The notes: a model not told the origin generated them from the letters alone. DNA of 64,000 nt from Octopus sinensis (GCF_006345805.1 NW_021831839.1:1-64000), one strand, 5' to 3'. Counted from the first letter of the stretch, positions 29,451-62,835 are shown. Program-made: numbers and translations.

Positions 29451-32102
29451 ATAGTATACTATACTAGTGTAAGTATAGCATATACTATACTAGTGTAAGT
29501 ATAGTATCATATATTATGTTTGCAAAATGATATAATCTGACCTTGCCAGCAATTTATATGTGTGTACTGTTTGCCAGGAATGCGTTTAATATGTAAATTA
29601 GTCTATCCAGTTGTGTCACACTGTTGAACATATTGGGTATTGAAGCAATGTATCCATGGACTGTTGGTGGGTTAGATGTGGTATTAATGAAAGAGCAATA
29701 ACTCTTGAAATATGTAAATACACCCATTACCTTCATTTTCTCTCTTCAATTGCATTGTTTACATAGACATATTCATTCGCAAATGTTGTAACTGGCAGTG
29801 CTGATTCTGGAAAGCTATCACTATAAAGCACCATAGGAGGGAGACAAGTACAGTTTGACAATACAAGAATACACTGTTTGCTTTATCATTTTTTTGTCAA
29901 AATCATATTTCATTTGAAAGTTTTCTATGTGAACTTTCTTCTCATATAATTTGAATCAAAATCCGACTCATGGCATTTTATGCCATTTTCCTTCAATCAC
30001 CCTGGTATCTCCACCCATTCACAAAGTTTGTCCTTTTTTTTTTTTATTTTGACTACTGAAAGGTAGCTCTCATCTTTGTTCAGTGTGCTGGAGCACTATA
30101 ACTTGATTCTTTTGCAGACCATACTGTCATGAAAAGGACTTTTACTGCTTTATTTTGATATAAAAATCAATGAAAGTAGGTCAAATATTCCCTATGACAT
30201 ATAAAAGTGAAAATGTTATCATCAACTTTCACTTAGAAAATAGTACATTTTCTTCAAGATTTTTATGTCATAAGAAAGAAAAATTACTTGCCAGTTAGAT
30301 ATGATCATTGCTGAATCTGGCCACAGTATGGTGAAAAAGTGCAAAGTCAATAAAGAAAATGGTACACTGACACTACTAGTCTCTGTGGTGAGAGGTTAAA
30401 CAGAACACAAATCTGAGGTTTCAGAATCCAAGGCTCTGGTTTGGGCCAGTGTTTCAAGAAATGAACTAATTACTAAGTAAACATATTTCTATAGAAAAAT
30501 GCACTAAAATGAGCTGCTTCAGACTTCTAGAACCCATAATTAGCATAGAATGATTGTATTGTGAATCTTTATTCCCTCTTGTTGTGTAACAAAGTGTGAA
30601 GATTGATGTCTGAATTATACCTTGTGGATATTCTTGTACATGTAAATTTCATTGAGAAATATTGGTCAAATTTTGCAAACACAATTATATTGTACAATGA
30701 ATATTATTTTGTAGACTATTTAGGTTCAATATGAAGCATTTTCTTTCCCAATTTTGAATATAGTTGGATAATTTGTAGTAGTGTTTACATAGTCATTTTA
30801 GGTTTTTGTCTCTCTCTCCTACTAACAAGTTTGCTATGTTACAGATGTTTTTAATATCTTTAATTCAAGCTTTTAATGCTAAAGCAAGGAATTAGATTTT
30901 ACATTTTGTTTGTCTTTTAATCTGGGTCTACATGCAATTCTGAGAAAGGTGCCAGGTCATCATGTCATGTGCTAGAAGCAACAGCTAAATCTTCTGTAAA
31001 TCATACACTTTTTCATTTGAAAATGTTTTCAAAGATCATTTCATAACCCAAACGTTTCTCTTGTTTTTTTAAGTGCATTGTACAGAAAAAAGAGACCAAA
31101 ATCAGTCCAGAGGGGAGGAAAGGAGGTTGGAAAAAATCATAGATTTTCAATAAATTTTTCTATAACATACCTTGCCCTGTCATATCCAAGGCGGTGGTGA
31201 AAAGAAAATTGGAAAAATCCCCATCAAAATTCAGCTTAGATGGACATCCTGACCCCAACTCTGCTGCTTATAGCTATTTTTAATAGCCCATTAAAATTGT
31301 ATTGAAATGGTGTCATGATCCCAAATCTCAGGATTTATTTAGCTTGTATCTATTACAAATATGCCAAAACTCAAGTCCTTGTGACTCGTACTTTTGAATT
31401 TAGCTAAGTCTGAAAACCCTGAAATTGACTGTTTGTTACATGTAACAAAATAGGTTTTACATAAATATTTTTAAAATTGCTCCCAAAACAAAGTTTTATA
31501 TTCAAAAACCTGAAAAAAAATAGAAAGAAAAAGAAAGCCACCTATTTGTGTAATACAAGTTGGTTATCACCTCAGTTTCAAAGATATATTACAAAATGGT
31601 CAATTATTCATGTAGGCTAATTAGGCAAGATTTTAACAAATTCACTGGACACCCAAGTCATCATATCTCCTAAAATATTCATTCAAATTTCACAAATGAG
31701 GTATCAAAATGTTTGTTTTTGGATGCTCTCCAAGAAAATGTACAGTAGAAATTACATTTAAATAGTTTCAAAAATTCATAGTGACCCCTATAGAAAATCA
31801 TATTTTACTTGGATGTTCTGAGGTATTTGAAAGAGAGAGTGTAATGGAAGATGCTAAAGATATGACTAAACAAAACACTGTTTTTTCTTTGCATTTTTTA
31901 GATTAACTGTGTCTAGTATTTTTATTACTTATCCTCTATACTGCTCTTCCTAATTTCACCATGATAATACTTGCTCATGGGTTCCTGTTTTTGCAAAGAC
32001 AAGTTCCTATGATTTATGTTGAATTATTTTTTACACTATTATTTTGCATCACGGACTATTTGTAGAAATTGTTCCTATCAGTATTTATCATTTTCTTTGT
32101 AG

Positions 32103-32160
32103 ATAATGGAATTTAACCCGTTATATTTGAAATACTTGTTCCTTGCACAATGCTTCTGTG
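32103..32160 (+). CDS. Signal-peptide exon of a putative Ig-superfamily secreted or membrane protein (ATG at 32106)
   Basis: Acceptor TCATTTTCTTTGTAG, donor G|GTAAGT, ATG with A at -3 and G at +4. Encodes MEFNPLYLKYLFLAQCFC plus a phase-1 G. Confidence 0.62.
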
Positions 32161-32454
32161 GTAAGTAACAATATGTCTCTTATATAAACATTTTTATTCA
32201 GAATTTTTAATTGTCATAAATTTGTATCCACTGTAGAATTTAATCATAACTATTGCTGTTTGATCCTAAGGCCAGTGCTGATAAATTATGTTTAAAGGTG
32301 TTGCATATGTTGATATTTCATATTGTTTTTGCAGCTTCATTTTCCATTATTAAGGTGATAAGTGGTGATTTGAGGTGAATTTGGCTGCTATTTCTAGCAG
32401 ATTGACTTGAACCTGACTAGCCTACATCTATTTTCATGGCTACTATATATTGGC

Positions 32455-32602
32455 ACAGTTATAGAGCTTAGAAGTTTGTGTTCCAAACAACTAGCTTTGG
32501 GTTCAGTTTCACTGCATGGCACCTTAAGCAAGTATGTTATACTATAGCTCCAGATCAACCAAAGCATTCTGAGTAGATGTGGCAGATAACTGAAAGCCCA
32601 TC

Positions 32603-32605
<3 letters not shown>
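32455..32605 (+). mobile_element. SINE 5' half, same family as 9717-10092
   Basis: GGGTTCAGTTTCACTGCATGGCACCTTAAGCAAGT...GAAAGCCCATCAT then (TA)n. Confidence 0.75.
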
Positions 32606-32655
<50 letters not shown>

Positions 32656-32749
32656 TGAGAAAGCACGTGGTTGAATATATAGAAAATAGTAAAAAGTGAA
32701 AAAACTACAGAAGGCTTGTTTTAAAAGGTTAAAAAATATATTTAGTTAG

Positions 32750-34735
32750 TTAGTTAGTTAGTTAATTTGGCTCAAAAGCAAATAGCAAGGCCATGTAGGG
32801 GGACATGGAGTTAAGTACAGGGTGGTGTTCATGTAAAGAGTTCAGGCCACTTGAGGTCCAGGGAGGCTTTGAACAAAGCGGTCGTCGGCATCTTCACCAT
32901 CTCGTCTGGCAGCTTGTTCCACGGATCTGCAACCCGGACGGAGAAAGTTCCTCTCCTTCGATTGAGATGAAATCGTCGCAGGTAGAGCTTTTCGGAATGA
33001 CCCCGCAGCCAACGCTCCGGAGCAGGAGTGAAGAACAGCTCTTTCGAGAGGTTACACTTCCCGCTTATGATGTTGTGGGCGAGAATGAGATCACCACGGC
33101 GGCAGCGTTTTTCAAGAGAACAAAGGTCGAGCGTCCTCAGCCTTTCTTCATAGGACAAATTTTTGAGACCATGAACCATGCGGGTAGCCAGCCTCTGGAC
33201 TCTTTCGAGGTGCTGTATGTCTTTGAGGAGATAAGGAGAAGAGGCTTGAATCCCATACTCCAATATGGGTCTCACCAGCGTGACATAGAGTGGCAGGAAT
33301 ATGGCTGCTGTGAGCATTCCGAATGACCGTCGAATCAAAAACAGAATTCCGCGCGCTTTGTTGGCAGCATGGACGCACTGGGCCGAAGGCGAAAAGGAGG
33401 AATCCACCAAGATACTCAGGTCCTTTACCTGATCGGTCCTCTCCAGCAGCAGACGACCCGGCTCGAAATCAAGTTGAGTTGCAGGAGTAGAGCCGACAGG
33501 CAGATGACAGCACTTTGACACGTTCAGACACAGGTCCCAATCGTTAGACCACTTCCAAATTTGGTGGAGGCATCGACGAAGATCCTCTATACTACCGCGA
33601 GGAGCGACCAGTTTGATATTGTCGGCAAATAGAAGGGTGTGTTCCGTGAGGTCGTCGGGCAAGTCGTTTATGAAGACTAAGAACAACAAGGGCCCAAGCA
33701 CTGAACCTTGAGGCACGCCACTGCTCGCACTGGAGACGTTGGACCGTGAACCATTAACTTGAACTTGGAAGGAGCGATCTGAGAGGAAGGCACCAACCCA
33801 TCGTACAATATCCGGATGGAAACTATATGCTTGAAGCTTGACAAGTAGTAGGCGGTGGTTTACCGAGTCAAAAGCTTTGGCAAAGTCCAATAAAACGATG
33901 TCAACAGCATCACTATCATCGAGGATGCGCGTCACCAATTCTTCCATTACTAGTAAGTTGGTCAAGCATGATCTCTTCGGCACGAAGCCGTGTTGGGAAT
34001 CAGTGATCGAGGCTGTGTTTAGGAGGTGGAGCATCATACTTTTCTTAAGGATGGTTTCGAACATCTTGCTGATTATTGATGTAAGGGAAACCGGTCGGTA
34101 GTTAAGCGGGCCTTCGCGGCTCCCTTTCTTGAAAATTGGGCAGATTATCGCTGTTCTCCAGTCTGCAGGTATAACACCCGTCGCCAATGACATATTGAAT
34201 AGTCGTGTTAAGGGCTCGCAAATGACCGGAGCCAACGCTTTGATAACCAGTGGGTGTATGCCGTCAGGGCCGTGATCCTTGTTGACATCGAGGCCTTGAA
34301 TAACACGTTTGACTTGGTCCCGCGTGATGATCAATCGAAGCATTGGAGGTACCGATCTATCAAATGGAGGGGGTTCACGACCATCATCTTGTTTGAAAAT
34401 AGTTGAAAAAGCCTCAGCAAATAATTGACTCTGTTGATAAGGATCCTCAATCGATACGCCTGTTGAGTCTACCAACGTTGCAATCTGGTTGTTCAAGCGG
34501 GAATTCCGCTGGACATGGGCAAAGAAGGTTTTGGGATTGCTACTGGCATTTGCCGCGATTTTGTATTCATAACTGAAGCGTTCCTTCTTTTCAATTTTCA
34601 CGGCTCGGTCTCGTTGAGTTTTGTACACCTCAAAAGCTGCAGTCGAATCCAGATTTTTGAATTCAGCCCAAGCAATATCTCTGAGTCGACGTTCTCGTTT
34701 AACCTTCTTCGTCACCCAGGGCTTGTGTTTCTTCT
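32750..34735 (-). mobile_element. Young CR1-clade LINE, 5'-truncated, with an uninterrupted 628-codon RT ORF (32829-34715)
   Basis: LDFAKAFDSV, SGVPQGSVLGP, FADN (catalytic YxDD altered), LERVQRLATRMV, WNKLP. (CTAA)n tail. CpG-rich. Confidence 0.95.
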
Positions 34736-34744
34736 CCTTATCTC

Positions 34745-35250
34745 CTCAAGCTTCTTCTCCTTATCTCCTCAAAGACATACATCATCTCGAAAGAGTCCAG
34801 AAGCTGGCTACCTGCATGGTTCTTGGTCTCAAGCATTTGTCTTATGAAGAAAGGCTGAAGACGCTCGACCTTTATTCTCTCGAAAAACACAGCCACCGTG
34901 GTTATCTCATTCTCACTCACAACATCATAAGCGGAAAGTGTAACCTCTCAAAAGAGCTGTTCTTCACTCCTGCTCCAGAGCGTGGGTTGCAGGGTCACTC
35001 CGAAAAGCTCTATTTATGACGATTTCATCTCAATTGAAGGAGAGGGGCTTTCTCCGTCCGGGTTGAGGATCCGTGGAATAAGCTGCCGGATGAGATAGTG
35101 AAGATGCCGATGACTGCTCGGTTCAAAGTCTCTCTTGACCAGAAATAGCCTGAACTCTTTGTATGACCACCCTCCCTGTACATATCTCTCTGTCCCCCTA
35201 CATGGCCTTGCTTTTGCTTTTTGAGCCAATAAAAATTGAATTGAATTGAA
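34745..35250 (+). mobile_element. Older 3' fragment of the same CR1 family in opposite orientation
   Basis: About 85-90% similar by eye to the reverse complement of 32765-33245, with stop codons. (AATTG)n tail. Confidence 0.92.
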
Positions 35251-35257
35251 AAAATAC

Positions 35258-37662
35258 TCTGCCAGAACCTTGGACCCTACACTACAAAAATGTTTTGCTG
35301 TTTTTACCAAGTTTGCCCTCAGTAGCTGCCCAAACTCCTCTGCTGAAAGCTTCCCTGGAATTATATCAGGGAAGCTTTGTATACCACATCAATAGATACT
35401 TTCGGCATGAGAGAAAGGCAAAACCCAGATTGGTTCAGTGCTGAGCTCTCAGCTGGAAACAGTTATCGAAGCAAAGTGTGCAGCTCTGATGCAATACAAG
35501 AGTGATTCTTCTACAAAGTCACTCAAAGAACTCAGAAAGGCAAGAAATAAAACCCAACTGACTGCCAGACGCCATGCAAATAGGTACTGGCAGGAAATCT
35601 GTCAGAGTATCCAGTCAGCTGCTGACGGTGGTGACACCTGTGGGATGTATGCCGGTTTGAGAAGGCCCTCGGTCCATCCGCAACTAAGTCAGCCCCTCTG
35701 AAATCAACTACTGGAGATCTCATCAAGGACCAAATCAAGCAAATGGATAGATTAGTGGAGTACTACCAGGATCTCTACTCACGGGAGACCACGGTAGCTG
35801 AGTCTGCAATCGAGGATGTCAAGATCTTCCCAGTCATGTGTGAACTTGACAGTCTGCCATCTATAGCAGAACTCACCAAGGCTATTGACTCCCTAGCAAG
35901 AAATAATGCTCCGGGAAAAGATGGCATCCCCTCAGAGATCATCAAAACCGGCAAAAACACCATCCTGCTTCAGCACCTTCATGAGCTTCTGTATCAGTGC
36001 TGGGAAGAGGGTACAGTCGCTCAGGATATGCAGGATGCTAACATCATTACACTTTGCAAAAACAAAGGTGACCGTGGTAATTGTAACAATTACCGTGGAA
36101 TATCTCTTCTAAGCACTGTTGGAAAGACCTTTGCTCACGTTATCCTGTCCAGGCTACAACTGCTTACTTCTCAAATTTATTCAGAATCACAGTGTGGCTT
36201 TAGAAGAAGCAGATCAACTATTGACATGATATTCTCCATACTTCAGGAGAAGTCCAGACAGCAGAAAATGTCATTAGATATGGTCTTCATTGATCTGACA
36301 AAAGCCTTTGACTTGGTAAGTAGAAAAGTCCTCTTCATCCTGCTCCAATAAATCGGATGTCCACTAAAGCTGCTGGGGATCATCAAATCTTTCCATGATG
36401 ATATGCAAGACATCATACAGCACAACGATTCAACATCAGCCGCCTTCCAAATAAAAAATGGGGTAAAGCAAGGTTGTTCCTTGCTCTTATATTATTTGGC
36501 ATCTTCTTCTCACTGCTGCTGTCACATGCCTTTGAGACATCAGATGATGGAATCTTTCTGTACAGTAGAAGTGATGGGAAACTGTTCACTCTCTCGCGTC
36601 TGTGTGCCAAGACCAAAATCAAAAGTGTCCTGATCAAGGAAATACTATTTGCTGATGATGCCGCTCTGGTATCACACACAGAAGAAGCCTTGCAAAGGCT
36701 TATCAACTGTTTTGAGCAAGCATGTAGTGACTTTGGCTTAGTTATCAGCCTCAAGAAGACCAACATCATGGGTCAGGCTACATAGGACATCCCAAACACA
36801 CATATTGGAGACCACAGACTACAGGAAGTGGAGAAGTTTACTTATTTTGGCTCTACCGTCACCTACAACCTATCCCTTGATGCTGAGCTAAATATACGCA
36901 TTGGCAAGGCAGATGCTGTGATGGCCCAACTCTCCAAATGGGCATGGGACAACAATAAGCTGACCAAGACCACAAAAATGAAGATTTACCAGGCATGTGT
37001 ACTTAGCACTCTACTGTATGGAAGTGAGTCTTGGACACCATATACACGCCAAGAGCGTCGCCTAAATATCTTTCACCTGCACTGCCTCTGGAAAATCCTT
37101 CTCATCAAATGGCAGGACCATGTCTCCAACAAAGATATCCTCAAGCAAGCAGGAATACCAAGCTTGTTTGCACTCCTCACACAAAGACGTATGAGGTGGC
37201 TTGGACATGTTAGCCATATGGAAGATGGCAGAATCCCCAAGGACATACTCTATGGAGAGCTTGCTTGGGGCACTAGGTCTGTGGGAAGACAGTTCTTACG
37301 ATACAAGGATGTTTGCAAAAGGGACATGAAGGCCTGCAACATTAATATAACCAACTGGGAAGCAGTTGCCAGCAACCGTGGAGATTGGCGACGTACTGTA
37401 AAAGAGGGAACACAAAGGAGTGACATAGAGAGAGAGGAGAAATGGAAAAACAAGAAAAGATTTCAAGAAGAAACTATGACATTACAACCAGCCAGGCAAA
37501 GTCTTCGCTACATTTGTGGCACCTGCTTGAGGGATTGTTTGTCCAGTATAGGACTACACAGCCAAAGCAGGAGATGTATTAGGACATGAAATGTAAAAGC
37601 CAGACTAGATTATTTTATATGCAACTCCATTGTCTCGCGAGACTAAAAGGATGCCAACAACA
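35258..37662 (+). mobile_element. RTE (BovB-like) LINE copy A, 5'-truncated
   Basis: APGKDGIP, YRGISLLS, FIDLTKAFD, LFADDAAL, RMRWLGHV, C-terminal CGTCLRDCLSSIGLHSQ, tail GATGCC(AAC)n. Paralog of 57570-60510. Confidence 0.95.
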
Positions 37663-37734
37663 ATATATATGGATTTCGTAGACAGGAACTGAAACAAATC
37701 AACTGTATATATATATATATATGTATGTATATAT

Positions 37735-37870
37735 GTAAGTGTATGTGTGTGTCTTTGTGTTTCACCCTCATCACTGCTGTTCATTTATTTACATCCACAC
37801 AACCGACTGTTTTCACAAGAACAAACTAATAGAATAAGTACCAGGCTTATCGACATAAATAAAGCACTAG
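37735..37870 (+). mobile_element. SINE internal fragment
   Basis: ...ATAGAATAAGTACCAGGCTT... matches 9970-9990. Confidence 0.55.
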
Positions 37871-37924
37871 GCTGTGTCTCATATTTTTGTTTGCCCACTC
37901 AGTTGTATCTATCAATTTGTCTTT

Positions 37925-38067
37925 TTATGTGTGTGTGTGTGTATATCTATATGTATTTATGTATGTATGTATGTATGTATGTATGTATGTATGTATGTAT
38001 GTATGTATGTATGTATGAATGTATGTATGTAACTATCTATCTATATATCTATCTATCTATCTATCTA

Positions 38068-38122
<55 letters not shown>
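37925..38122. repeat. Compound (TG)(TATG)(TATC)(TA) microsatellite
   Basis: Direct reading. Confidence 0.98.
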
Positions 38123-38129
<7 letters not shown>

Positions 38130-38337
38130 GAAAAAAACCATCTTTTATCAATTCAAAATGAACAATTAAATTACACCCTTTAGAAAGTTACCTATAATAG
38201 AAATATTAACATTAAAATAGCAATAAAATGTCAATGATTAAGTAAATTGCTAAAAAATAAAATAATAATATATATTATATTGTGTGAAACTTGATTTAGT
38301 ACTTCTAAATAAGTTTTGGATTTTATTTCCTCAAATA

Positions 38338-38369
<32 letters not shown>

Positions 38370-38377
<8 letters not shown>

Positions 38378-39250
38378 TAACACCCTAATGGGAGCCTTAA
38401 CTCCCAAATTTTAGTAATTTCTTTTATGATCCAAAACTAGGTCAAAAGTACTGAATGAATCTTTATGAAATTTGGAAATTATATTCTATGCATAAGGGCC
38501 ATAAACCCCATGACAATTCATGTAATTTTGCTGTTGATGAAATTTTAATCATAGATATTAGACACAAATGAAGTAATATTTATAAAATTTCATCTTCTTA
38601 CAAGTTAGAAAGACCCCTCCATGGGGACTTAACACGCACAATTTTGTCATTTTATCTAAGCATAAATGAATACAGTTGTGCTCTTGGAAGCTGTAGGGTT
38701 ACCTGAGCATAAAAGATGAGCATTATTTATGGTGAGGAATCCTACATTGGGAGTGGTATCTACTAGGGTAGGATAGCTGACTGCTTATTGTGATGATTCA
38801 TCTTTTGGTTTCCTGTAGCTTTGCTCTCTTTTACAAACCCAGTGAACATATATTTCCTATTTCAAAGAAATTCAAGCAATAGATATAAGACCAAAGTTAA
38901 AAAGATTCTCAACAATTCAACTTCTCTGGTTGACATTAAGATGCCCACCCCCAATAGGGGCATTAACTCTCACATTTTAGAGCTCTATGACCTCCATTTT
39001 TCAGGAGCAAAATCCTTTTAACAGGTTCCATAAAACTGGAATTTTGGAATATGCGCATAAAAATCAGTAGTATGGGATACATGTGGCACAATTACAATTT
39101 TGTTTGTGTGTGTAAAGAGGCAAATAACCCTCATCTGCAATTTTGATGAAATTCGAAACATAGGTATTCCAGTTCATTACAGAAAATATAACAGAAAAGT
39201 CTAATTCTTCAATTGTGTGTAACTTGGGCAACGCCGGGTAACTCTTCTAT
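38370..39250 (+). mobile_element. Probable non-autonomous Helitron-type repeat
   Basis: Ends with a hairpin-like TTGGGCAACGCCGGG...CTTCTA, resembling the Helitron 3' ends at 27040-27067 and 56005-56035. Confidence 0.4.
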
Positions 39251-39304
39251 TATATATATACGTGAAAGAGCACAATTCAAGCGTGATTGTTACGAACATC
39301 GACT

Positions 39305-39560
39305 TACTGGCACCTGTGCCAGTGGCATGTGTTAAAAGATTTGAACGAGGTCATTGCCAGTACCGCCTGACTAGCCCTGTGCTGGTGGCACATAAAAAGC
39401 ACCCACTACACTCTCGGAGTGGGTGGCGTTAGGAATGGCATCCAGCTGTAGAAACTCTGCCAGATCACGAATGGAGCTTGGTGCGACCGTCTGGTTCACC
39501 AGCCCTGAGTCAAAATCGTCCAACCCATGCTAGCATGGAAAGCAGACGTTAAATGATGAT
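39305..39560 (+). mobile_element. RTE-X 3' tail
   Basis: GGCACATAAAAAGCACCCACTACACTC...CCAACCCATGCTAGCATGG...GTTAAATGATGAT. Confidence 0.85.
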
Positions 39561-40149
39561 ATATATGATATATATGGATATATATGATATATATGGATAT
39601 ATATGATATACATGGATATATATATATATATATATCCATTTATAAAGAGGCATTTTTCATCAATAAATTTCTCCCCCAACTAAATATGAACACACAACTC
39701 AATACAGAACACCACTAACTCTTCAATTGAAACCACTAAACCCTATACACTTCCTACACTACTCACATCTCTAAATCCAGAACTACTTACCTCCCTTACA
39801 AATAATCTTTTTTCTCAGGAACTATTAGACCTGACACCCTTCATTAACCGGTGTTATTCAAGCGATGAATAGTTTTGCGTAAACCATCATTTGTTTTGTT
39901 CTCTTACTTTATTATCATCTTATAATCATCTCATAATAAGGACTTTTATGACTCGTATTACTACCTCAGTCAATCTAAATGTATATATTTGTCGTTATCT
40001 GTCATAAATAGCCTTTTTCTATTTGCAATGTGCATTTTTGTTGATTTTTCTTATTTTACCCTTACATTTCCATGTGTATTTTTTATTTTCTTTCCGTAAC
40101 ATATTTCTACTATCCATATATATATATATATGTGGATATATATATATTT

Positions 40150-41716
40150 TTTCATTTTTTCATTTTATCTAGTTTCAGCTCACGAGCTGTGGCCATGCTG
40201 GGGCACCGCCATTTGGTGTTGCTACATGATTTTACTTCACGAATGCTTTTTAGCAATTGACATTTGGTGCATGAGAGAGTTTGATGCAGCTGCCCTTATC
40301 TGCACCTCCTGCTGTGATGTTGGTTCATCTGGGACACCTGATATGAAGAGGTCCCGCATTATTTTAAAGACATCTGCATCCACACCATGCAGGTCTCTCA
40401 GGTCCTTCGGGAGGATATTGAAGAGCTGTGGACCTTTGAAGCCCAGGCTATCACAGTATCTTGTCCTACATCTTGATGGCAAATTTGGAGTCCTTGGCCC
40501 TATGCAGTGGAGCCCAGTTCTAGTATTTGTGTAACTCTCAATGTGAAAGTTTGAGACAAGTCCTTCCAGGATCTTCCAGAGGTATATTATGGCATATCTT
40601 TATCGCCTACGCTCTAAGGAATAGAGTCTTAATCTCTTGAGTCTGCTTTCCTTGAAGAAAATAACTTGCTGCCTGACACCCAACATGGTTTCCAGCCAGG
40701 AAGTAGCTGCCTAACTCGGCTCCTACAACACAATGACTGGGTACTGAAACAACTGCTCAACCACTCAAATGTGGAAGTCATATATCTCGACTTTGCAAAG
40801 GCCTTTGATAAAGTCGATCATGGAATGATATGTCACAAACTGTGTGATCTTGGCATAGTTGGGAAATTGGGAGAATGGCTTCATGACTTTCTGAAGGATA
40901 GAAGTCAGGTGGCCACCTCCAATGGGGCCACCTCCAATAACATGCAAATAGTGAGCGGTGTTCCTCAAGGCACTATTTGGGACCACTACTGTTCATAATG
41001 GCCCTCTCAGACATGCCCTCATCCATGCAGGGAGCCACGATCACAAGTTATGCCGATGATACAAAAGTTTCACAGGTAATACAGAACCCTGAAGACACTA
41101 TGCACCTGCAATGTGAGCTGGATGAAATACAAATGGGCTGAAAAGAATAGCATGCAGTTCAATGCTGAAAGTTTCAAGCTTTATGCTATCAGCATGCAAA
41201 ACTAAATGCAATACTCAATAAATACACTGGACCTGGAGGGATTGCAATCCCAGAGGCACAATCAGTGTGAGACCTAGGTATTTACATGATTAATGATGCA
41301 ACCTTTCATGTGCATGTTGCTAAATTGGCAATGAAATGTAGGTGGCTGACCGGATGGATTCTTAGAGCTTTTAGAACAAGAGACCAGGAAACCATGACGG
41401 TCCTCTGGAGGACACTTGTCCTTAGCCACTTTGACTATTGCTCTCAGCTATGGTCACCAACCAGTGTCAAATTAATCACAGAATTTGAGGCAATCCAACG
41501 AAGCTACACGAAGAAGATAGCCTCTATATAGCATGTAAGCTATTGGGAAAGGCTCAAGAGATTAAGACTCTATTCCTTAGAGTGTAGGCGATAAAGATAT
41601 GCCATAATATACATCTGAAAGATCCTGGAAGGACTTGTCCCAAACTTTCACATCGAGAGTTACACAAATACTAGAACTGGGCTCCACTGCATAGTGCCAA
41701 GGACTCCAAATTCGCC
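40150..41716. mobile_element. CR1/L2-group LINE with an inverted 5' part: 3' end on minus (40150-40643), RT body on plus (40646-41716)
   Basis: Plus strand: LLPDTQHGF, YLDFAKAFDKVDH, SGVPQG, YADD. Minus strand: SLGFKGPQLFNILP...VPDEP and the 3' tail. About 165 bp is present in both orientations. Confidence 0.88.
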
Positions 41717-42500
41717 AAGGACCCCAAATTGAGGGGCTTCTTTATCAAAGTGTCTATCTGCATTTGCTTGTTTATTCGAATGTGTAGTTTCCTAGTAGTG
41801 CTCCCTACGTAGGGTGCCCCACATTTATTGCAGACGACCTCATATACTGCATGTTTTGATGTCATTGATGGGGCAGTTGGTGAGTGTGCACTCCACAGTG
41901 CTCCCTTAGGTATTTTTCCTTGATAGAGCTTTCTTCAGGGATAGACTGGTGTGTACCAGCTGTATGTTAAGTCTCTCCCTGCGGATGGATGTTGGGTAGC
42001 TGCTGATGTTCTGTCATCTAAGTAGGGCAGTCTAAGGAAGCATGTTTCTGATCTGATGTTATGGGCTTCTCTGTGTAGTTTACCCACTTTCATTATTCAC
42101 AGAGGCAGTCTTTTAGCTGTGGATGGTGGATAACCGTTGTGTGCTAAGTTCCTGAGGAACCGCTTCATGCTGATGGCTTTGTCACTTACTTCATTGCATC
42201 TGTCTCTTATGCATGTTATTTAATTTTGTATATGTGCAGTTTTGGCTCTGGTGGACCGGGCCGAATCATAATGCATGAATAGATTCCTAGTCACTGCTTC
42301 TTTTGTAAAGATTCATGTGGATGTAACCATCCTCTGTGATCCTGATTTGGAAATCCAGCAGAGAGAGAGATCCAGGCTTGTCTGGGTGTTCATTTTCAAA
42401 TTTATGTGACTGTCAATGTAGTTGAATTTTTCATGTATGGAATTTACTCCTTCCCGTGAAGGGTGAGCATCTCACATTATTCCATCTTTACACAACTACA
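41717..42500 (-). mobile_element. Penelope-like element remnant (RT thumb plus GIY-YIG)
   Basis: GSLSLLDFQIRI...LFMHYDSA and AVYEVVCNKCGAPYVGSTTRKLHIRI. Confidence 0.82.
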
Positions 42501-42789
42501 TTCTTTAAATACATATGTATTTATATATATATATATACTTGCTGACATAACCGGTAATTCCTAGGAAAGTGGGGCTTGTCCCTTTGTTCCATTCTCATAA
42601 TTGTTTCGCTAATCCATTAACAACAATACAAAGTATCAGTCTTACACAGGAACTTGTTTTTAGGAATTCCCAATAAGTTATGAATTCCCAAATTGTGAAG
42701 TCAGTTATGTAATAACATGAAATTAATTACCCGATAGTAAGATTTCAAACAAAGTAGCCCCAAAATGGCTTTAATACATTCCCAGAGTA

Positions 42790-44070
42790 TATAGAACTTA
42801 AGAGGAAGCACTGATAAGGTATGTATACTAAAATCATGAAGCATGTTATGTAAGGACAGGCTAATGAGATAGGAGATAATAACAATTCAAAGTAAATAAC
42901 TCTGAAAAAAGCTTTTGTGCATCTGCAGAGAATATTACCCTCAGCGGTGCTAGTGTTTACTTCGCAAGTTGTGAAATTTGTTTTTGTGATCTTGTTTGTG
43001 CTATAGTTTGCAATTTTGTCATAAACTGAAAGTTTGAACCAAGAGCCAATGTGAAATTTTGCGTTAAACTTGGGAAGTCTGCTACAGACATTGATCATGC
43101 TTTGGCAAGCTTACAGCGATGAGGCAATGAGTTGTATGCAAAGTTTCAATTAGTGTGGATGCTTCAAAAGTGGAAGAACATCCTAAGAAGACAGAGAGCA
43201 ATCTGGGTGACCTACCATGAATGTCTGCCTGTAAAATTCATCAGCTTGTGCATGAGGATCATCTGAAAGACAACATTGCTGATGCCGGTTTGTCATATTG
43301 GTTCATGGAGGCAATCCTAACATCTGAATTGAACATGTGGTGTGTCTTTGCCAAGTTTGTCTCCTGCCTGCTGACTACTGAACAGAAAGAACATCATGTC
43401 AAAGTCTGTCAAGATCTCCATTGGCAGGCTTCTGATGACCCATCCTTTATGTCAAGAATCATCACCGGTGATAAGAGTTGGGTCTATGGGTACAACCCTG
43501 AGATGAAGCAACCATCATCCCAATGGAAGAGGCCTTCATCACCATAACCAAAGAAGGTATAACAGATCTACAGCTCAATCAAGAGCATGCTCATTGTTTT
43601 TTCAACATCACCAGTATTGTGCATAAAGAATTCATCCCATAAGGCCAGACAGTCAATGGAGAATTTTACTGTGATGTTGTGAAGCATTTGAGGGAGGACA
43701 TTTGGCTAAACAACCAGATCTATTGAGCACACAGAAGTGGATTCTTCATGATGACTGCTCCCTATCTGAGTTCCTTGCCAAAAACAACATGGTATCACTC
43801 CCACACTTGCCCTATTTGCCAGGTTTAGCATCTGCAGACTGCCATCTCTTTGCCAAGGTAAAAATTTAGCTCAAAAGTTGCCATTTTAACACTGTTGTCA
43901 TGATGAAGAGTGAATCACACAGAAAGTGCTCGACTTGCTTACAGAAAATGATCTCCAGGCCAGATTCCAATAGTGGCAGGAATGTTGGGATCAGTGTATT
44001 GCTGTGCAAGATGACTTTTTCAAAAGAGATGCTGTTAAAAACTTAAGTAAACAAGTTATTTTTTTATTAA
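42790..44070 (+). mobile_element. Mariner transposon remnant
   Basis: ANVKFCVKLGKSATET, AKFVSCLLTTEQKEHHV, RIITGDKSWVYGYNPE. Decayed C-terminal motifs. Confidence 0.87.
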
Positions 44071-44073
44071 ACA

Positions 44074-45250
44074 CTAGCAGTGTAGCCTGGCTTTGCCAGG
44101 ATTAAGTTAGGATTATTAAGCTAATGAAGTTCGTTATTTCAAACCAAACTAAGTAACATCGATGTCATATTTGAGCGAAATCTGTTGAAATTGGTAAAAT
44201 TTTGGCTGAAAATGAGTTGCAGATGACTTGATTGGGAAATCCCATAAGGAATCGGTCTATTGATTTTTTTTCCCACTCATCGATCTTTTTTCGTTTTTAG
44301 AGAACTGAGAGTATTCAAAGATCCCATGACTCCTAAGTAAGGCTGGCATCAAGTTTGAACAAAATACATCAAATTCGGTAAAAGTTATGGTTGAAAATGG
44401 GGTGTAGCCAATTTTATTGGGAAATCCTATAAGGAATCGGTTTATCGATTTTTTTTTATTTTTTTATCCTGATTAAATGGAAAACCCCATGAGGAATCAG
44501 TTAATTGGTTTTTCATCCCAAATAGGACTTAACCGAACACAATATTGTTGATTCAAAAACATAAATATTTATTCTTTAAAGTTGGTTTTCACACCCAACT
44601 CAGTTCTGCAGAATCGGTGTCGTGATGGGAGCGCATGGGTTGATCAGGCTGCACATGCACATGTGATCAGGTTGCACATGTGATCAGGTTGCACATGCCA
44701 GCCCTTTGAAAACACCACCCCCATCATCTAACCCCCCTTTGCCCGTGGGTTGGGAAGCCTTCCAGCAAGGAAAATAGAATGCCCAAAAGAGCTCCCGCTC
44801 CTCTGTGTCAGAAGTGGTTACATTCAGATCACAACTAAGTTTTAAGAATATATATATATATACACACACACACACGATCATACACATATTGCATACATGT
44901 GTTTTGTTCAGATATATGTTCGTGTGTGTGTGTGTATGTGTGTGTGTGTGTTGCCCGTATATCGACAAAATACTTAACAAAAGTTTTAACAAAAACTTAC
45001 TCATAGCTAGAAGGGGACTTAACTCCTGTTGTAAACAATTGTGGATTTCTCCGACTTGAAAATTGCTAAAAGTTTTGGCTGAAAATTCATTTTTACCATT
45101 ATGCTGGTGCCTCTGAGAAAAATAAGTTGACAAAAATACAGCTAGGGTCATGATGAATGTCCTAAAATTGGAGCGACATGCATGCTATGTGGACATGCAT
45201 AAATTACATCCACGTACACACACACATCATGCCTTTTATATATATACAGA
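44074..45250 (-). mobile_element. Non-autonomous Helitron
   Basis: Minus strand starts A|TCTGTATATATATAAAA at 45250 and ends with a hairpin and CTAG|T at 44074. 44074-44840 is homologous to the reverse complement of 55300-56035. Confidence 0.75.
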
Positions 45251-45304
45251 TAACTAATCTGGGAACTTTTTAATACCATTCCCTACCTTTTAATATTCTC
45301 ATGT

Positions 45305-45520
45305 TTTTAAGGCGGTGAACTGGCAGACTCATTAGCACACTGGGCAAAATGTTTAGTGGCATTTTGTCCGGCTTTACATTCTCAGTTCAAATTCATCTGA
45401 GGTTGAGACTTTGCCTTTCATCTTTTCCAGGTCAATAAATAAGTACTAGTTGAGCACTGGGGTCAATGTGATCAACTTATCCCCTCCCCCAACATTCCTG
45501 GCCTTGTACCAAAATTTGAA
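45305..45520 (+). mobile_element. tRNA-derived SINE, second family
   Basis: GGCGGTGAACTGGCAGA (A-box-like), GTTCAAATTC (B-box-like), ATAAGTACTAGTTGAGCACTGGGGTC. Confidence 0.72.
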
Positions 45521-46060
45521 ATCAATATTTTCACTGTCTTCTTCATCATTCTGTCCGCTGTTAATTTTTGCCCAATTAAATATAATAAATAAAATCTTTT
45601 AAATTTTAAAACTAATGTGAATACAAATACAGATTTCACAGAAAATAGAACAAAATGGTAATCATTTGTGTTATTTAAATAAAGTTCAGGAACCGAATAT
45701 CTCTTCATATTTGAATGTGATTTCACATCCTAAAGTAGGTGTGTGCTTCTGATTGACATGTTTCTTTTACTTTCTCCTGATCAGATGATATGATTATAAT
45801 ATTTGAGTCATTGACAGAAAGTTAATGCCTTAGGCATTATCTATGATACATGGGTGTGATTCCTATTCTCTCTGAAATATTCTCTGTACATCTATTCACA
45901 TTTAATTTTAAATTATGCTTTAAAAGGAATTTTTCAATTAATCCTCTTAATTTTAATTTATTTCAAGTTGTTGTTCTTGCATTAGAAAAATTACTTCTTG
46001 GAATGACAAGGTAGCTATTAAATGATATGTATATGTGTTTTATATTTTCATTTCCTTCAG

Positions 46061-46330
46061 TTTCTCTTGGATTAATTGAGGGTGGCACAAAATTTACCAG
46101 GAAGAATCAACCAGTAACTTTTGAATGTCCTCTTGAAAAGCAAAACCTTAAACACTGGCGAATTGATAGATACATCATTAGCAGAACTGCTAAAACTGAA
46201 ACTTTGAAGCAAATGTGCTTCCTAACAATGTCAGGATCATAAACATCACACTTCTTCAAATATTGAGCAAATAATTGTTTGTGAAAGCACCACTGGTGAG
46301 AAGACAAGATTCATGCAAAACCATTATTCA
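46061..46330 (+). CDS. Ig-like-domain exon, frameshifted in this sequence (pseudogene or assembly errors)
   Basis: Acceptor TTTTCATTTCCTTCAG, donor A|GTAAGT, 270 bp. Phase-1 frame reads VSLGLIEGGTKFTRKNQPVTFECPLEKQNLKHWRID. The other frames give EANVLPNNVRIINITL and NIEQIIVCESTTGE. Confidence 0.58.
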
Positions 46331-46472
46331 GTAAGTACAAATATAAATCATTTGTATGTATTTTCCTGTCAATATTAATCTATTATGACCATGAAGAAGA
46401 AATATATTCTATAAACACTAACTTTGAGTTTCAGTCAATTCACAAAATATGTTGTAACAAACTATACTGCCA

Positions 46473-46633
46473 ATAATACATTGAAAGAATGTTCATTTTA
46501 ATACATGATGAAGATGATGATGATTTTTTTTTCTGTAAGTATTTTATCCTATATATGTTGTTATTATTGAAAAAGCTGAGAGTCATCATCATCATCTTCG
46601 TATCTTAAAATGAACATTCTTTCAATGCATTAT
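46473..46633. repeat. Inverted repeat with ~50-bp arms and a ~60-nt spacer
   Basis: CATTGAAAGAATGTTCATTTTAA (46479-46501) is the exact reverse complement of 46605-46627. Arms extend into (GAT)n and (ATC)n. Confidence 0.92.
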
Positions 46634-46724
46634 CTTTTTTTAGTGTGTATACTGGTTGGATTTCTGATTGTCATCAGAAATGTTATTCTTGAATATGCAA
46701 ACACGCACATACACACAAGTATAT

Positions 46725-48420
46725 ATTATCATCATCACCATCATCATTGTCATAGTTTAGCATCAATTTCCATGTTGGTATGAATGAGATGGTTTGACTG
46801 GAGCTGGCATGGCCAGGAGCTGTACCAGGCTCCATTGACTTCTTAGGTTGATAAGGCTGAGATGCTGGAGATGGTGAGGAGGAAACATGCGCATCATACT
46901 GAACATAGTAAATCATGCAGACAAACATGCAGACAAACATTGCACATCATATTGAACATTGTAACTTCATACCTTTCTAGTCTTTGCATGCCCTCTACAT
47001 TCAAGGACCATGTCTGCCTATCACGTGGCATTGCTGTTTGTGCACAGGCATCACACAACCTTCCTTTCTCTCAGAAAGAGAGACTTTGGTTGCCACTTGA
47101 GGTAAAAGATCTCTGAACTTTCTCCATCTTATTCTAGCAATTTCATTTCCTCTTCCACTGAAAATTAGGTCACCTAGCTAGCAGAAATTGCCCAGTACCT
47201 TTAGAGCACTCTTGGGCATTTGTGAAAATCCATTTCTTGTATTCTTGTAGATTTTATGACTCCTATGCATTTTCCACATACAGACACTAATTCTCTGTTA
47301 ACCTCCCTACTGTTTCCACTGCACCTGTTTGCATCCATTGCATACCCTGAATACGCTGAAATGAATTTCTGCCTACACCATTCTTACATACTGAGAAAAA
47401 CCATTTACCTGAAGTGAGTAGGGTCCTGTTTGTTTTCTTGTTTACAAGGCTTTGTCTTTGCTAACTTAACTTCAGGGCTCTTTGATCCAGGCTTTGCTTC
47501 CACACCTGAAACCTTTTTCTAGTTTTGTTACTGATTCTGCTGTGAGAGCAAGGTAATTTACATATAGTAGTTCTCATTGGCTTCCAGGCTTAAATTCCTC
47601 TGTTATGACCTGGAGGACAATTCTGAATAGGAGGTGGCTGAGGACTGAGCCTTGATGAACACCTAACCTACACTAAATTTATCACTGTGCTCATGACTAA
47701 TTCTAACATTATTTATAGCAACCCTGTACAATACCTGAATTGCTTTTCACAAGCGTCTATCTATCTCTAGCTTCCTGAAAGACCAGCATTTTACAGAGCA
47801 GGGTGCTCTGCTGAATGCTTTCTCCAGGTCAACTAATGCCAAGTACAACAGCTTATTCTTAGCTTAATATTACCTTGTACTCGCCTGACTTCTTCCATTA
47901 CTGTGCCAAACTGCATTTCATCTAGCTTAATTTGTTTCTAATTAATTGGGTTATTATTCTCTCCATAACTGTCATCACTTTGTCAAGCAATTCGAGACCT
48001 CTATAATTAATTCTATCTAGTGCATTTCGTTTACTATTTTAGTCACTGATTATGATCCTGGTATACCAGTCATTGGGGATTATACCTTCCTGAATAACCT
48101 AATAACTAAACAGTGTCTAGATTGTATCCAACTTTATAGATATTTTAAGCATCTCAACAGTGACTCCTGAGGAACCAAGGATTTTTCCAGTCTCTATATC
48201 TTTAATTACATTATATCATACTGCTGTCTATATGAATGGTTGGCTCCTCTGTTGGGTTCACATGATGGGGAGCCTCCTTTTTCTATTCATTCTCTACATT
48301 TAATAGCCCTTCACAGTTGCTCTTTCACACATTTTTCTTTTTCCTTCTAACCACTAACACTAGCATGCCATTATCTATCTGTACACATTTATCCCACAAA
48401 ATCTCAATCAATCTCTGACA
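46725..48420 (-). mobile_element. Decayed RTE-X LINE (RT, PHD region, tail)
   Basis: Minus-strand peptides YLALVDLEKAF, GVHQGSVLS, SGKWFFSVCKNGVGRNS, ARIRWRKFRDLLP. (GAT)n tail at about 46725. Confidence 0.8.
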
Positions 48421-48424
48421 CACT

Positions 48425-48828
48425 CTTTTACAATTTTATTTGTTTCAGTCATTTGACTGCGGCCATGATGGAGCAGTGCCTTTAGTTGAGCAAATCGACC
48501 CCAGGACGTTATTCTTTGTAAGCCTAGCACTTAGTCTCTCGGTCTCTTTTGCTGAACTGCAAAGTTACAGGGATGTAAACGCACCACAATTGGTTGTCAA
48601 GCGATGTGGGGGGGGGACAACACAGACACACAAACATTTAACACACACATATATATATACATATATACGACAGGTTTCTTTCATTTCCGTCTACCAAACC
48701 CACTCACACACACTTTGTCAGCCTGATGCTATAGTAGAAGATACTTGCCAAGGTGCCACACAGTTGCAATAAACCCAGAACCATGTGGTTAGTAAGCAAG
48801 CTACTTACCACACAGCCACTCCCGCACC
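48425..48828 (-). mobile_element. tRNA-derived SINE, full length, same family as 9717-10092
   Basis: Head GGTGCGGGAGTGGCTGTGTGGTAAGTAGC. Tail stem CAGTC-AAAT-GACTG at 48446-48459. Confidence 0.9.
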
Positions 48829-49074
48829 TGTGTAGCAATATGCAAAATCTCAAGTCTCTGATCTTCATACTGTAAGATATTGGCAAACCTCTTCCGTCTG
48901 CTTCTACCCTAGCAAGATAAATCTAGTACCTTGCTTCCCTTTTAGCTACTAATATGGTTCTTTGCTACTATCCCTTTTCCACACTTTCCAAACCCATTTC
49001 TTTTATAGCCCTGTCGACCTGATTGTTCCACCACCATATCACCTTTGATCTGGCAAAAGCTTTGCTCCAACCAC

Positions 49075-60510: not shown

Positions 60511-60539
<29 letters not shown>

Positions 60540-60595
60540 TTCAAGACATATATATTTGTATATATATACATATATATATTATACTTGAGTAGATA

Positions 60596-60654
<59 letters not shown>

Positions 60655-60659
<5 letters not shown>

Positions 60660-62777: not shown

Positions 62778-62835
62778 TATATATATATATAATATATATA
62801 TATATATATGTATATATATGCATATATATATGTAT

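What the first reader, a model, noticed from the sequence alone, without database searches (positions are those of the whole stretch)
32103..46330. Hidden Ig-superfamily gene: signal peptide and Ig exon joined across a 13.9-kb TE-filled intron
Seen: neither exon stands out in the ORF track, but phase-1 splicing gives MEFNPLYLKYLFLAQCFCVSLG-LIEGGTKFTRKNQPVTFECPLEKQNLKHWRID. This has a hydrophobic leader ending S-L-G, a B-strand V-x-F-x-C, a C-strand Trp, then a V-x-I-x-N-x-T stretch and a second Cys. Known: Ig-domain exons are typically phase 1-1. I do not recognise the family, so it may be a divergent lineage-specific receptor or secreted protein. No further exon was found before 64000.
Basis: partly seen in the sequence, partly recalled or inferred. 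Interest (0 to 1): 0.7.

Follow-up and report, generated by a model that had tools for sequence, protein, structure and literature searches.

The report
Octopus single-Ig-domain gene, frameshifted here
The two exons are real and match a three-exon octopus gene for a small secreted protein made of one immunoglobulin-like domain, copied from the front end of a family of large multi-Ig membrane receptors; in this window three single-base gaps, most likely assembly errors, break its reading frame.

Summary
ATG 32106-32160 (donor G|GTAAGT) splices in phase 1 to 46061-46330 across a 13.9-kb intron full of reverse-transcriptase fragments. The frame-corrected peptide matches three 113-aa RefSeq "uncharacterized proteins" of Octopus sinensis (E 2e-60). 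The best is LOC118761327, whose contig is collinear with the window at 98.7-99%.

The window's exon 2 lacks three single bases present in all three O. sinensis copies. They lie in a 45.3-49 kb patch where differences private to the window are mostly small indels, so assembly error is likelier than pseudogene decay.

Pfam does not recognise the domain. Four other lines support an Ig fold:
- It is homologous (E 1e-27 to 1e-7) to the N-terminal domain of octopus proteins with up to eight Ig domains, a transmembrane segment and a tyrosine-motif tail.
- Cys41, Trp51 and Cys93 are invariant.
- The exon is phase 1-1.
- An AlphaFold model (pLDDT 80, about 84-95 across the domain) finds Ig domains in Foldseek.

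Unexpectedly, exon 2 diverges 3-5 times faster than its flanking introns among the copies, mostly by non-synonymous changes in residues 23-69. The gene is an uncharacterised, lineage-specific IgSF member. Expression and function are untested.

The parts
31800..32105 (+). Upstream region conserved with a distant paralogue; candidate promoter / 5' UTR
   Evidence: Window 31800-32218 aligns at 76.5% to O. bimaculoides L004 9659-10113, which spans exon 1 of LOC128247863. An in-frame TAG lies directly before the ATG. No promoter function was tested.
32106..32160 (+). Exon 1 (coding part): MEFNPLYLKYLFLAQCFC plus the first base of Val19. This is most of the signal peptide. Donor G|GTAAGT, phase 1.
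   Evidence: The 18 encoded residues are 100% identical to P0001-P0003. Residues 8-27 are the only hydrophobic stretch of the protein.
32161..46060 (+). Intron 1, 13,900 bp, filled with LINE/reverse-transcriptase fragments and simple repeats
   Evidence: RVT_1 at 32832-34745(-) with E 2.7e-30, at 35635-36348(+) and at 40633-40995(+). (TATG)n at 37926-38120. In the O. bimaculoides relative the same intron is only about 3 kb.
46061..46330 (+). Exon 2: end of the signal peptide (SLG) plus the whole Ig-like domain. It is 270 nt here but 273 nt in all three O. sinensis copies, where it is phase 1-1.
   Evidence: There are 0 substitutions and 3 one-base gaps against L001. Homologous to D1 of the multi-Ig proteins.
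46200..46201 (+). Frameshift 1: one base missing between these positions (GAA[T]ACTTTG in L001)
46258..46260 (+). Frameshift 2: the A-run is AAA here but AAAA in L001, L002 and L003
46310..46311 (+). Frameshift 3: the T-run is TT here but TTT in L001, L002 and L003
46331..49008 (+). Intron 2 (2,678 bp). The first ~130 bp are highly conserved even in distant paralogues. Contains a SINE-like repeat at 48422-48806.
   Evidence: conservation; repeat copy at 9716-10089, minus strand.
49009..49022 (+). Exon 3 (coding part): completes Thr110, then Leu-Ser-Thr and TGA (49020-49022). Acceptor cttttatag|.
   Evidence: Conserved in L001, L002 and L003. The segment 48828-49036 resembles dispersed repeat copies in L004, so the exon looks TE-derived.

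Best explanation
The locus is the counterpart, in this assembly, of Octopus sinensis LOC118761327. That is a three-exon gene whose intact form encodes a 113-aa precursor.

The precursor has a ~22-residue signal peptide (exon 1 plus the first codons of exon 2) and one ~88-residue Ig-like domain (exon 2, phase 1-1). It ends in a 4-residue tail from a small TE-derived terminal exon. There is no transmembrane segment, so the product would be a secreted single-Ig protein.

The gene arose by duplication of the 5' module (promoter, exon 1, intron 1, exon 2) of an octopus-specific family of multi-Ig type-I membrane receptors. These receptors have up to 8 Ig domains, a TM segment and a tyrosine-motif-rich tail. 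The window's domain corresponds to their membrane-distal domain D1.

Shown:
- exon structure and homology;
- Ig-like fold, from a predicted model plus the invariant Cys/Trp/Cys;
- absence of D2-D8 exons from the window;
- whole-unit duplication of ~20 kb;
- exon-2 divergence exceeding intron divergence, with a non-synonymous excess.

Inferred:
- secretion;
- action as a soluble recognition or decoy module for whatever D1 of the parent receptors binds;
- diversifying selection on the face formed by residues 23-69;
- that the three single-base gaps in the window are consensus errors of the assembly rather than real mutations.
For: - Homology of the spliced peptide: E 2.3e-60, 96% identity over 94% of the query, where the mismatches include my guessed frame junctions.
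- Collinearity with the LOC118761327 contig: 98.7% over 30 kb.
- Exact reconstruction of the three CDSs from three exons with AG/GT boundaries in L001, L002 and L003.
- D1 homology to P0004, P0006, P0007, P0008, P0009 and P0010, E 8.6e-27 to 1.1e-7, over profile positions 1-110. The later domains of those proteins are Pfam Ig_3, I-set, C2-set_2 and ig.
- C41, W51 and C93 are invariant, and the N-I-T motif (N80, I81, T82) is invariant or nearly so.
- AF2 with a 10-sequence alignment gives pLDDT 80, with 10-residue block means of about 84-95 over residues 31-110 and nine strands. Foldseek finds TCR alpha chains, CD226, obscurin Ig58 (TM 0.62 on the target) and viral Ig-family glycoproteins.
- The only hydrophobic stretch is residues 8-27.
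- No D2-D8 exon was found in the window or in L001-L003.
- Assembly-error argument: window versus L001 shows 143 gap events against 174 mismatches in 30 kb. Window-private indels are about 0 per kb at 26-38 kb but 5-14 per kb at 45-49 kb, mostly one-base deletions, with few private substitutions. Exon 2 has 0 substitutions and 3 gaps.
- Constraint and diversification: there are no indels in exon 2 among the three O. sinensis copies, while the flanks have several. Exon p-distance is 0.095-0.114 against 0.011-0.037 in +-300 nt of intron (Fisher p 6e-7 to 1.4e-4). dN/dS is 1.4-2.0 overall, and pN is 0.17-0.19 in residues 23-69. Variable sites by codon position are 21/13/9.
Against: - No transcript evidence could be consulted. 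The only records of the three proteins are the RefSeq genome models, with one contig each.
- No sequence profile sees an Ig domain in D1.
- Foldseek E-values are only about 1e-3, and the list also includes a few non-immunoglobulin beta-sandwich proteins (T4SS outer-membrane core, S-layer SbsC).
- dN/dS above 1 from three sequences is also what relaxed constraint plus gene conversion could give. pS in the variable block is itself raised (0.09-0.11, from 2.5-3 changes).
- Intron 2 of a full-length relative is 21.5 kb, longer than the 17.7 kb of window left after exon 2, so more distant Ig exons cannot be excluded.
- The terminal exon lies in repeat-like sequence.
- The three gaps could still be real mutations in this individual.
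Confidence: 0.6

Rival explanations
1. The window copy is a genuine pseudogene. The gene is intact in the RefSeq O. sinensis assembly but has been inactivated by three real one-base deletions in the genome this window comes from.
For: All three O. sinensis copies keep a 273-nt open exon, while the window has 270 nt with three frame changes and an early stop. Exon 2 is no better protected from window-private indels than its flanks: about 3 are expected at the local rate and 3 are observed.
Against: There are zero substitutions in the exon and almost none private to the window nearby, whereas indels reach 5-14 per kb and are mostly one-base deletions. This is an error spectrum, not a mutational one. 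L003 shows a similar private-deletion patch elsewhere, at 41-45 kb, as expected for unpolished long-read consensus in paralogous sequence.
Confidence: 0.2
2. Exons 1-2 are the 5' end of a full multi-Ig transmembrane receptor gene whose remaining exons lie beyond position 64000. On this view the TLST* exon is an alternative or artefactual terminal exon.
For: In O. bimaculoides LOC128247863 the D1-to-D2 intron is 21.5 kb. Family gene models span 45 kb to 779 kb. The exon-2 donor and phase are the same as in the full-length genes (F|N versus F|T at a phase-1 junction). Exon 3 sits in repeat-like sequence.
Against: Three independent RefSeq models all end in the same conserved mini-exon. No D2-D8-like exon lies in the 17.7 kb after exon 2 in the window, nor in the 10 kb after the gene in L001. 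The duplicated unit shared by the three copies runs only about 270-400 bp past exon 3 in the pairs involving L001 and about 1.2 kb further in L002/L003.
Confidence: 0.2
3. The 113-aa models are non-functional relics of partial segmental duplications that the annotation pipeline turned into genes. On this view the excess exon divergence comes from short-tract gene conversion with other family members, not from selection.
For: dN/dS >= 1. Whole 20-kb units are duplicated at 89-99% identity, with mosaic patterns indicating recombination or conversion. The terminal exon is TE-like. No transcript-derived copies were found in the protein collection. pS is also raised in the variable block.
Against: Neutral decay predicts exon divergence equal to intron divergence, not 3-5 times higher. 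Framework residues (Cys, Trp, NIT, the C-terminal half) and all splice sites are kept, and no indel or stop occurs in three copies although the flanking introns carry indels. No donor for conversion is visible among the family members at hand.
Confidence: 0.25
4. The Ig-like pattern is a chance product of picking favourable pieces from three reading frames.
For: Three frames are needed in the window, and Pfam finds nothing at E<=10.
Against: Homologues are found at E 2e-60 to 1e-7 in three Octopus species, with the frame intact.
Confidence: 0.01

Closest known systems
Octopus sinensis LOC118761327 (113 aa, RefSeq 'uncharacterized protein'; contig VCDQ01000950.1), with sister copies LOC115232233 and LOC115230241
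   Same: Same three exons, splice sites and flanking sequence. Collinear with the window at 98.7-99% over 32.7 kb. Exon 2 is identical apart from three one-base gaps.
   Different: The window's exon 2 is frameshifted three times. Upstream and in intron 1 the window resembles the LOC115232233 contig (L003) more than L001, so it is a mosaic of the two. It is unresolved whether these are alleles or paralogues.
Octopus multi-Ig transmembrane proteins: O. sinensis LOC115212116 (1220 aa), O. bimaculoides LOC106874545 / A0A0L8GVD7 'Ig-like domain-containing protein', LOC128247863/4, and O. vulgaris CAI9722592
   Same: Signal peptide and domain 1 are homologous (34-54% identity). They share the same exon phase and conserved intron flanks around the D1 exon.
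   Different: Those proteins continue with 3-7 further Ig domains, and the longest have a TM segment and a tail with repeated YxxM / YVxV-type motifs (the motif reading is mine, from the sequences). The window gene stops four residues after D1.
Canonical Ig domains with solved structures (TCR alpha chains, CD226, obscurin Ig58)
   Same: Predicted beta sandwich, with a Cys on strand B, a Trp ten residues later and a Cys on strand F. TM-score is 0.42-0.52 on the query and 0.62 on obscurin Ig58.
   Different: No detectable sequence-profile similarity. The Cys-Cys spacing of 52 residues and a short C'-D region fit an I/C2-like rather than a V-type domain. The set assignment was not tested further.
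Gene families in which exons evolve faster than their introns (conotoxins, snake three-finger toxins and PLA2; some immune-type receptors), and diversified invertebrate IgSF molecules (snail FREPs, amphioxus VCBPs). Comparison from general knowledge, not tested here.
   Same: Near-identical introns and signal peptide flank a hypervariable stretch of the mature domain, with a non-synonymous excess.
   Different: Only three to five sequences are available. No expression, tissue or ligand data exist, and there is no fibrinogen or chitin-binding partner domain.

Membership tests
Immunoglobulin superfamily (Ig-like domain) | Two-sheet beta sandwich of 7-9 strands | tested here: met
   The AF2 model from a 10-sequence alignment has mean pLDDT 80, with block means of about 84-95 over residues 31-110, and nine strands. 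Foldseek PDB and BFVD top hits are mostly Ig domains, at E about 1e-3 to 2e-4 and TM 0.42-0.62. This is a predicted structure, not a solved one. The 3-sequence model was uninformative (pLDDT 38).
Immunoglobulin superfamily (Ig-like domain) | Conserved strand-B Cys, strand-C Trp, strand-F Cys, and an L/I-x-I-x-N-x-T E-strand motif before the F-strand Cys | tested here: met
   C41, W51 and C93 are invariant in all 10 family sequences; N80 and T82 are invariant and I81 nearly so. Disulfide geometry in the model was not inspected.
Immunoglobulin superfamily (Ig-like domain) | Match to a curated Ig-clan sequence profile (Pfam ig, I-set, V-set, C2-set, Ig_2, Ig_3) | tested here: not met
   No Pfam hit at E<=10 for the corrected peptide or its pieces. 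No Pfam hit covers D1 in the relatives. A family-profile search against PDB sequences gave 0 hits at E<=10. hhalign of D1 against D2-D8 of the same proteins gave probability <2%.
Immunoglobulin superfamily (Ig-like domain) | One domain per exon with phase 1-1 boundaries | tested here: met
   Exon 2 is 273 nt and phase 1 to phase 1 in L001-L003. The D2, D4 and D5 tblastn matches in L004 each form a separate genomic block of 255-318 nt. In the window the exon is 270 nt with three internal gaps.
Octopus multi-Ig transmembrane receptor family (LOC115212116 / LOC106874545-like) | Homologous signal peptide plus D1 | tested here: met
   hmmsearch E 8.6e-27 to 1.1e-7 over profile positions 1-110.
Octopus multi-Ig transmembrane receptor family (LOC115212116 / LOC106874545-like) | Further Ig domains, a transmembrane segment and a cytoplasmic tail | tested here: not met
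   tblastn with six family proteins finds only exons 1-2 in the window and in L001-L003; the other hits are TE-derived. The RefSeq model stops four residues after D1. Exons beyond position 64000 cannot be excluded.
Secreted protein | Cleavable N-terminal signal peptide and no membrane anchor | tested here: inconclusive
   The only hydrophobic stretch is residues 8-27, with S20 and G22 at positions -3/-1. The same N-terminus heads proteins whose longest members carry a C-terminal TM segment (P0007, P0009). No signal-peptide predictor was available.
Pseudogene | Disabling mutations that are real in the genome | tested here: inconclusive
   Three frameshifts are present, but the local excess of window-private one-base deletions without substitutions points to consensus errors. 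Raw reads are needed.

The most novel reading that the evidence does not exclude
The 113-aa genes may be a young, octopus-specific family of secreted single-Ig recognition or decoy proteins whose ligand-facing half (residues 23-69, roughly strands A' to D) is being actively diversified. The cause would be positive selection or targeted short-tract conversion, while the signal peptide, framework and even the introns stay nearly identical. That would be an invertebrate, germline-encoded hypervariable Ig module spun off from a cluster of tyrosine-motif-bearing multi-Ig receptors, and a candidate immune-type or self/non-self recognition system in cephalopods.
Probability: 0.25. Interest if true: 0.65.

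Novelty: new member of a known kind. Interest (0 to 1): 0.4.

Why it matters
Cephalopod immune and cell-recognition receptors are poorly known, and this family carries only 'uncharacterized protein' labels.

The finding shows that a reader of raw sequence can recover a two-exon Ig gene split by a 14-kb TE-filled intron that no ORF scan or Pfam search would flag.

It also links small secreted single-Ig genes to a cluster of large multi-Ig receptors with signalling-type tails. In addition it reveals an exon evolving several times faster than its own introns, a pattern usually tied to arms-race or recognition functions. If expression is confirmed, the family would be a tractable entry point into octopus-specific recognition biology.

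Practically, it flags patches of one-base deletion errors in paralogous regions of these assemblies, which can turn intact genes into apparent pseudogenes.

Tried and rejected
- Pfam on the corrected peptide and on each frame piece at E<=10: nothing.
- phmmer of the peptide against PDB sequences: only a spurious RESC9 hit at E 0.49. A family-profile search against PDB: nothing.
- hhalign of the D1 alignment against alignments of D2-D8 from the same receptors: probabilities <=1.7%, uninformative with such shallow alignments.
- AlphaFold with only the three close copies: pLDDT 38, unusable.
- A second copy of the gene, or D2-D8 exons, in the window: none.
- Exon 1, 2 or 3 as part of a repeat within the window: no; only a SINE-like element 200 bp upstream of exon 3. 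Exon 3 does resemble dispersed copies in the O. bimaculoides locus.
- The search for homologous proteins with the family alignment added only one fragment, P0013.
- The DNA of the O. sinensis 1220-aa gene and of the O. vulgaris gene could not be fetched, because the gene ranges (779 kb and 144 kb) are too long.
- Three literature searches found no description of this family.
- Chance ORF: rejected.


Full report
**1. What is in the sequence**

The window is AT-rich eukaryotic DNA littered with LINE-type endonuclease and reverse-transcriptase fragments, mariner remnants and (TA)n/(TATG)n arrays.

- An ATG sits at 32106, with an in-frame TAG directly upstream. It opens 55 coding bases, MEFNPLYLKYLFLAQCFC plus one base, ending at a consensus donor G|GTAAGT.
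- At 46061, behind a pyrimidine tract and CAG, a 270-nt exon begins. It ends at TCA|GTAAGT.
- The frame then hits a stop. The V-R-I-I-N-I-T stretch is in a second frame, IVCESTTGEKTRF in a third, and the last residues are back in the first.

**2. It is a real gene, already modelled in a sister assembly**

The corrected peptide retrieves three 113-aa RefSeq proteins of Octopus sinensis, all labelled 'uncharacterized':

| Protein | Locus | E-value |
|---|---|---|
| P0001 | LOC118761327 | 2.3e-60 |
| P0002 | LOC115230241 | 3.3e-50 |
| P0003 | LOC115232233 | 1.9e-48 |

The contig carrying P0001 (L001) is collinear with window 26205-58914 at 98.7-99%.

In L001, L002 and L003 the coding sequence can be rebuilt exactly from three exons with AG/GT borders:
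- exon 1, 55 nt;
- exon 2, 273 nt, phase 1-1;
- a terminal piece of 14 coding nt, ag|CCCTGTCGACCTGA, giving (T)LST and stop.

The window has this third exon at 49009-49022 behind cttttatag. That exon and its acceptor lie in sequence that resembles dispersed repeat copies in another octopus locus, so it looks like an exonised TE fragment.

**3. The three frameshifts**

Relative to L001 the window's exon 2 has no substitution. It lacks one base at each of three places:
- GAA[T]ACT, between 46200 and 46201;
- A4 reduced to A3, at 46258-46260;
- T3 reduced to T2, at 46310-46311.

At the second and third sites L002 and L003 carry the same base as L001. At the first they differ in sequence but keep the extra base, so all three exons are 273 nt.

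Over 30 kb, window and L001 differ by 174 mismatches but 143 gap events, which is far too many indels for biology.

I polarised the differences with L001 and L003. Window-private indels are about 0 per kb from 26 to 38 kb. They rise to 5, 12, 10 and 14 per kb in the 45, 46, 47 and 48 kb bins, mostly one-base deletions, with few private substitutions. L003 has its own private-deletion patch at 41-45 kb.

This is the signature of unpolished long-read consensus in paralogous sequence. The exon carries the number of indels expected from the local rate (about 3). I therefore read the frameshifts as probable assembly errors (about 0.7) rather than pseudogene decay. Only raw reads can settle it.

**4. 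Is it an Ig domain?**

Sequence profiles say nothing:
- Pfam at E<=10 finds nothing.
- A family profile against PDB sequences finds nothing.
- hhalign against the other domains of the relatives is uninformative.

A full HMMER scan of 1.84 billion representatives found octopus proteins whose first ~110 residues match the whole query, at E 8.6e-27 to 1.1e-7.

These relatives are 400-1220 aa long. Pfam finds Ig_3, I-set, ig and C2-set_2 in their later domains. By eye, P0007 has eight Ig-sized units followed by a transmembrane segment. P0009 adds a long tail of repeated tyrosine motifs (the motif reading is mine).

So the window's domain is D1, the membrane-distal domain, of a lineage-specific multi-Ig receptor family.

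- In a 10-sequence alignment C41, W51 and C93 are invariant, as are N80 and T82 of the N-I-T motif (I81 nearly so).
- With that alignment AlphaFold gives pLDDT 80, with block means of about 84-95 across residues 31-110, and nine strands. The three-sequence run gave pLDDT 38.
- Foldseek returns TCR alpha chains, CD226 and obscurin/obscurin-like Ig domains from the PDB, at E about 1e-3 and TM up to 0.62 on the target. From the viral library it returns herpesvirus and adenovirus Ig-family glycoproteins.

Together with the phase 1-1 exon, this supports IgSF membership. The caveat is that the sequence-profile criterion is not met.

**5. Architecture and origin**

No D2-D8 exon is present in the window or in L001-L003. 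The only hydrophobic stretch of the 113-aa product is the N-terminal leader, so the predicted product is a secreted single Ig domain.

The three O. sinensis loci share the whole ~20-kb unit, TE-filled intron included, at 89-99% identity. These are therefore segmental duplicates, or divergent haplotypes, of a 5' gene module.

In the O. bimaculoides relative LOC128247863, intron 1 is about 3 kb and the D1-to-D2 intron is 21.5 kb. Conserved blocks surround exon 1 and exon 2 even at this distance. Because 21.5 kb exceeds the 17.7 kb left in the window after exon 2, a distal continuation of the gene cannot be ruled out (rival b).

**6. An unexpected pattern**

Among the three O. sinensis copies, exon 2 differs at 9.5-11.4% of sites. 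The 300 nt of intron on either side differ at 1.1-3.7% (Fisher p 6e-7 to 1.4e-4), and the exon has no indels while the flanks do.

- The differences crowd into exon nucleotides 10-150, which encode residues 23-69. The second half of the exon is as conserved as the introns.
- Nei-Gojobori dN/dS is 1.4-2.0 overall. In residues 23-69, pN is 0.17-0.19 and pS is 0.09-0.11.
- Variable sites fall 21/13/9 on codon positions 1/2/3.
- Against the more distant paralogues (L004, L005), the exon is again more diverged than its flanks.

Neutral decay would give the intron rate, and purifying selection would give less. The excess therefore points to diversifying selection on one half of the domain, or to short-tract conversion from unseen donors. 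With three to five sequences this is a lead, not a result.

**7. A second oddity**

The window is a mosaic. Where L001 and L003 differ, it follows L003 from 26 to 40 kb and L001 from 40-44 kb and from 46 kb onward. It has only about 0.1% private substitutions. It is not resolved whether L001 and L003 are alleles or recently converted paralogues.

**8. Verdict**

This is a genuine, lineage-specific IgSF gene, modelled but uncharacterised in RefSeq. It is most likely intact in reality and most likely encodes a small secreted Ig domain derived from the front of a multi-Ig receptor.

It is a new member of a known kind. Its main interest lies in the fast-evolving exon and in the uncharacterised receptor family it belongs to. 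No literature on the family was found.

Noticed in passing
window 45300-49000 (also L003, corresponding to window 41000-45000): Patches where one assembly carries 5-14 private small indels per kb, mostly one-base deletions, and hardly any private substitutions. Neighbouring sequence has none. These look like unpolished long-read consensus in paralogous DNA and can create false pseudogenes.
   Followed up: yes
window 26205-49400 versus L001 and L003: The window is a recombinant-like mosaic of the two O. sinensis contigs: L003-like at 26-40 kb, and L001-like at 40-44 kb and from 46 kb on. Only about 0.1% of substitutions are private to the window. Alleles versus gene-converted paralogues is unresolved.
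   Followed up: partly
window 48828-49036 and 49104-49222: The terminal exon with its acceptor, and a segment just downstream, each resemble several dispersed copies in the O. bimaculoides locus L004 (68-76% identity). The copies of the exon-bearing segment are all antisense. The last exon therefore appears to be TE-derived.
   Followed up: partly
window 48422-48806 (+) and 9716-10089 (-): Two copies (81% identity) of a ~385-bp SINE-like element that carries a long spurious ORF (HTLLQFYLFQSFDCGH...).
   Followed up: no
window 35259-37586 and 57573-59499: Two copies (~92% identity) of the same LINE reverse-transcriptase segment, one inside intron 1 and one downstream of the gene. A further LINE with endonuclease plus RT lies at 14382-17764, with RT fragments at 2409-4404, 7734-8429 and 60597-62058.
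   Followed up: partly
window 51549-51989 (+): An ORF with a GIY-YIG nuclease domain (E 6.8e-9), suggestive of a Penelope-like retroelement. Reverse-strand ORFs at 52291-53597 have no clear Pfam call.
   Followed up: no
window 20135-20551 (-): Mariner-type transposase fragment (Transposase_1, E 1.1e-9). A similar-looking but unconfirmed fragment lies at 43221-43544 inside intron 1.
   Followed up: no
P0009 (O. sinensis LOC115212116), cytoplasmic tail residues ~800-1220: The tail has roughly ten repeats of an acidic unit such as EPRYLPMKHPDM(N/D)DVYVSVSRKPD, containing YxxM- and YVxV-type tyrosine motifs. This suggests a signalling receptor. The gene model spans 779 kb and encloses another Ig gene, so it may be chimeric.
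   Followed up: no
P0004 (O. bimaculoides LOC128247863), residues 381-446; window 47946-48098 (-): The C-terminus of this RefSeq model is TE-derived (RT-like) and matches TE copies in the window. The model is probably a truncated or chimeric annotation.
   Followed up: no
window 62133-63621: Repeated ~100-aa pseudo-ORFs on both strands (…AKTCWGKRNRNRIEPARIPGLVVRKKHYPTRG…) indicate tandem or nested copies of a repeat, flanked by long (AT)n arrays at 60502-60654 and 63647-63882.
   Followed up: no
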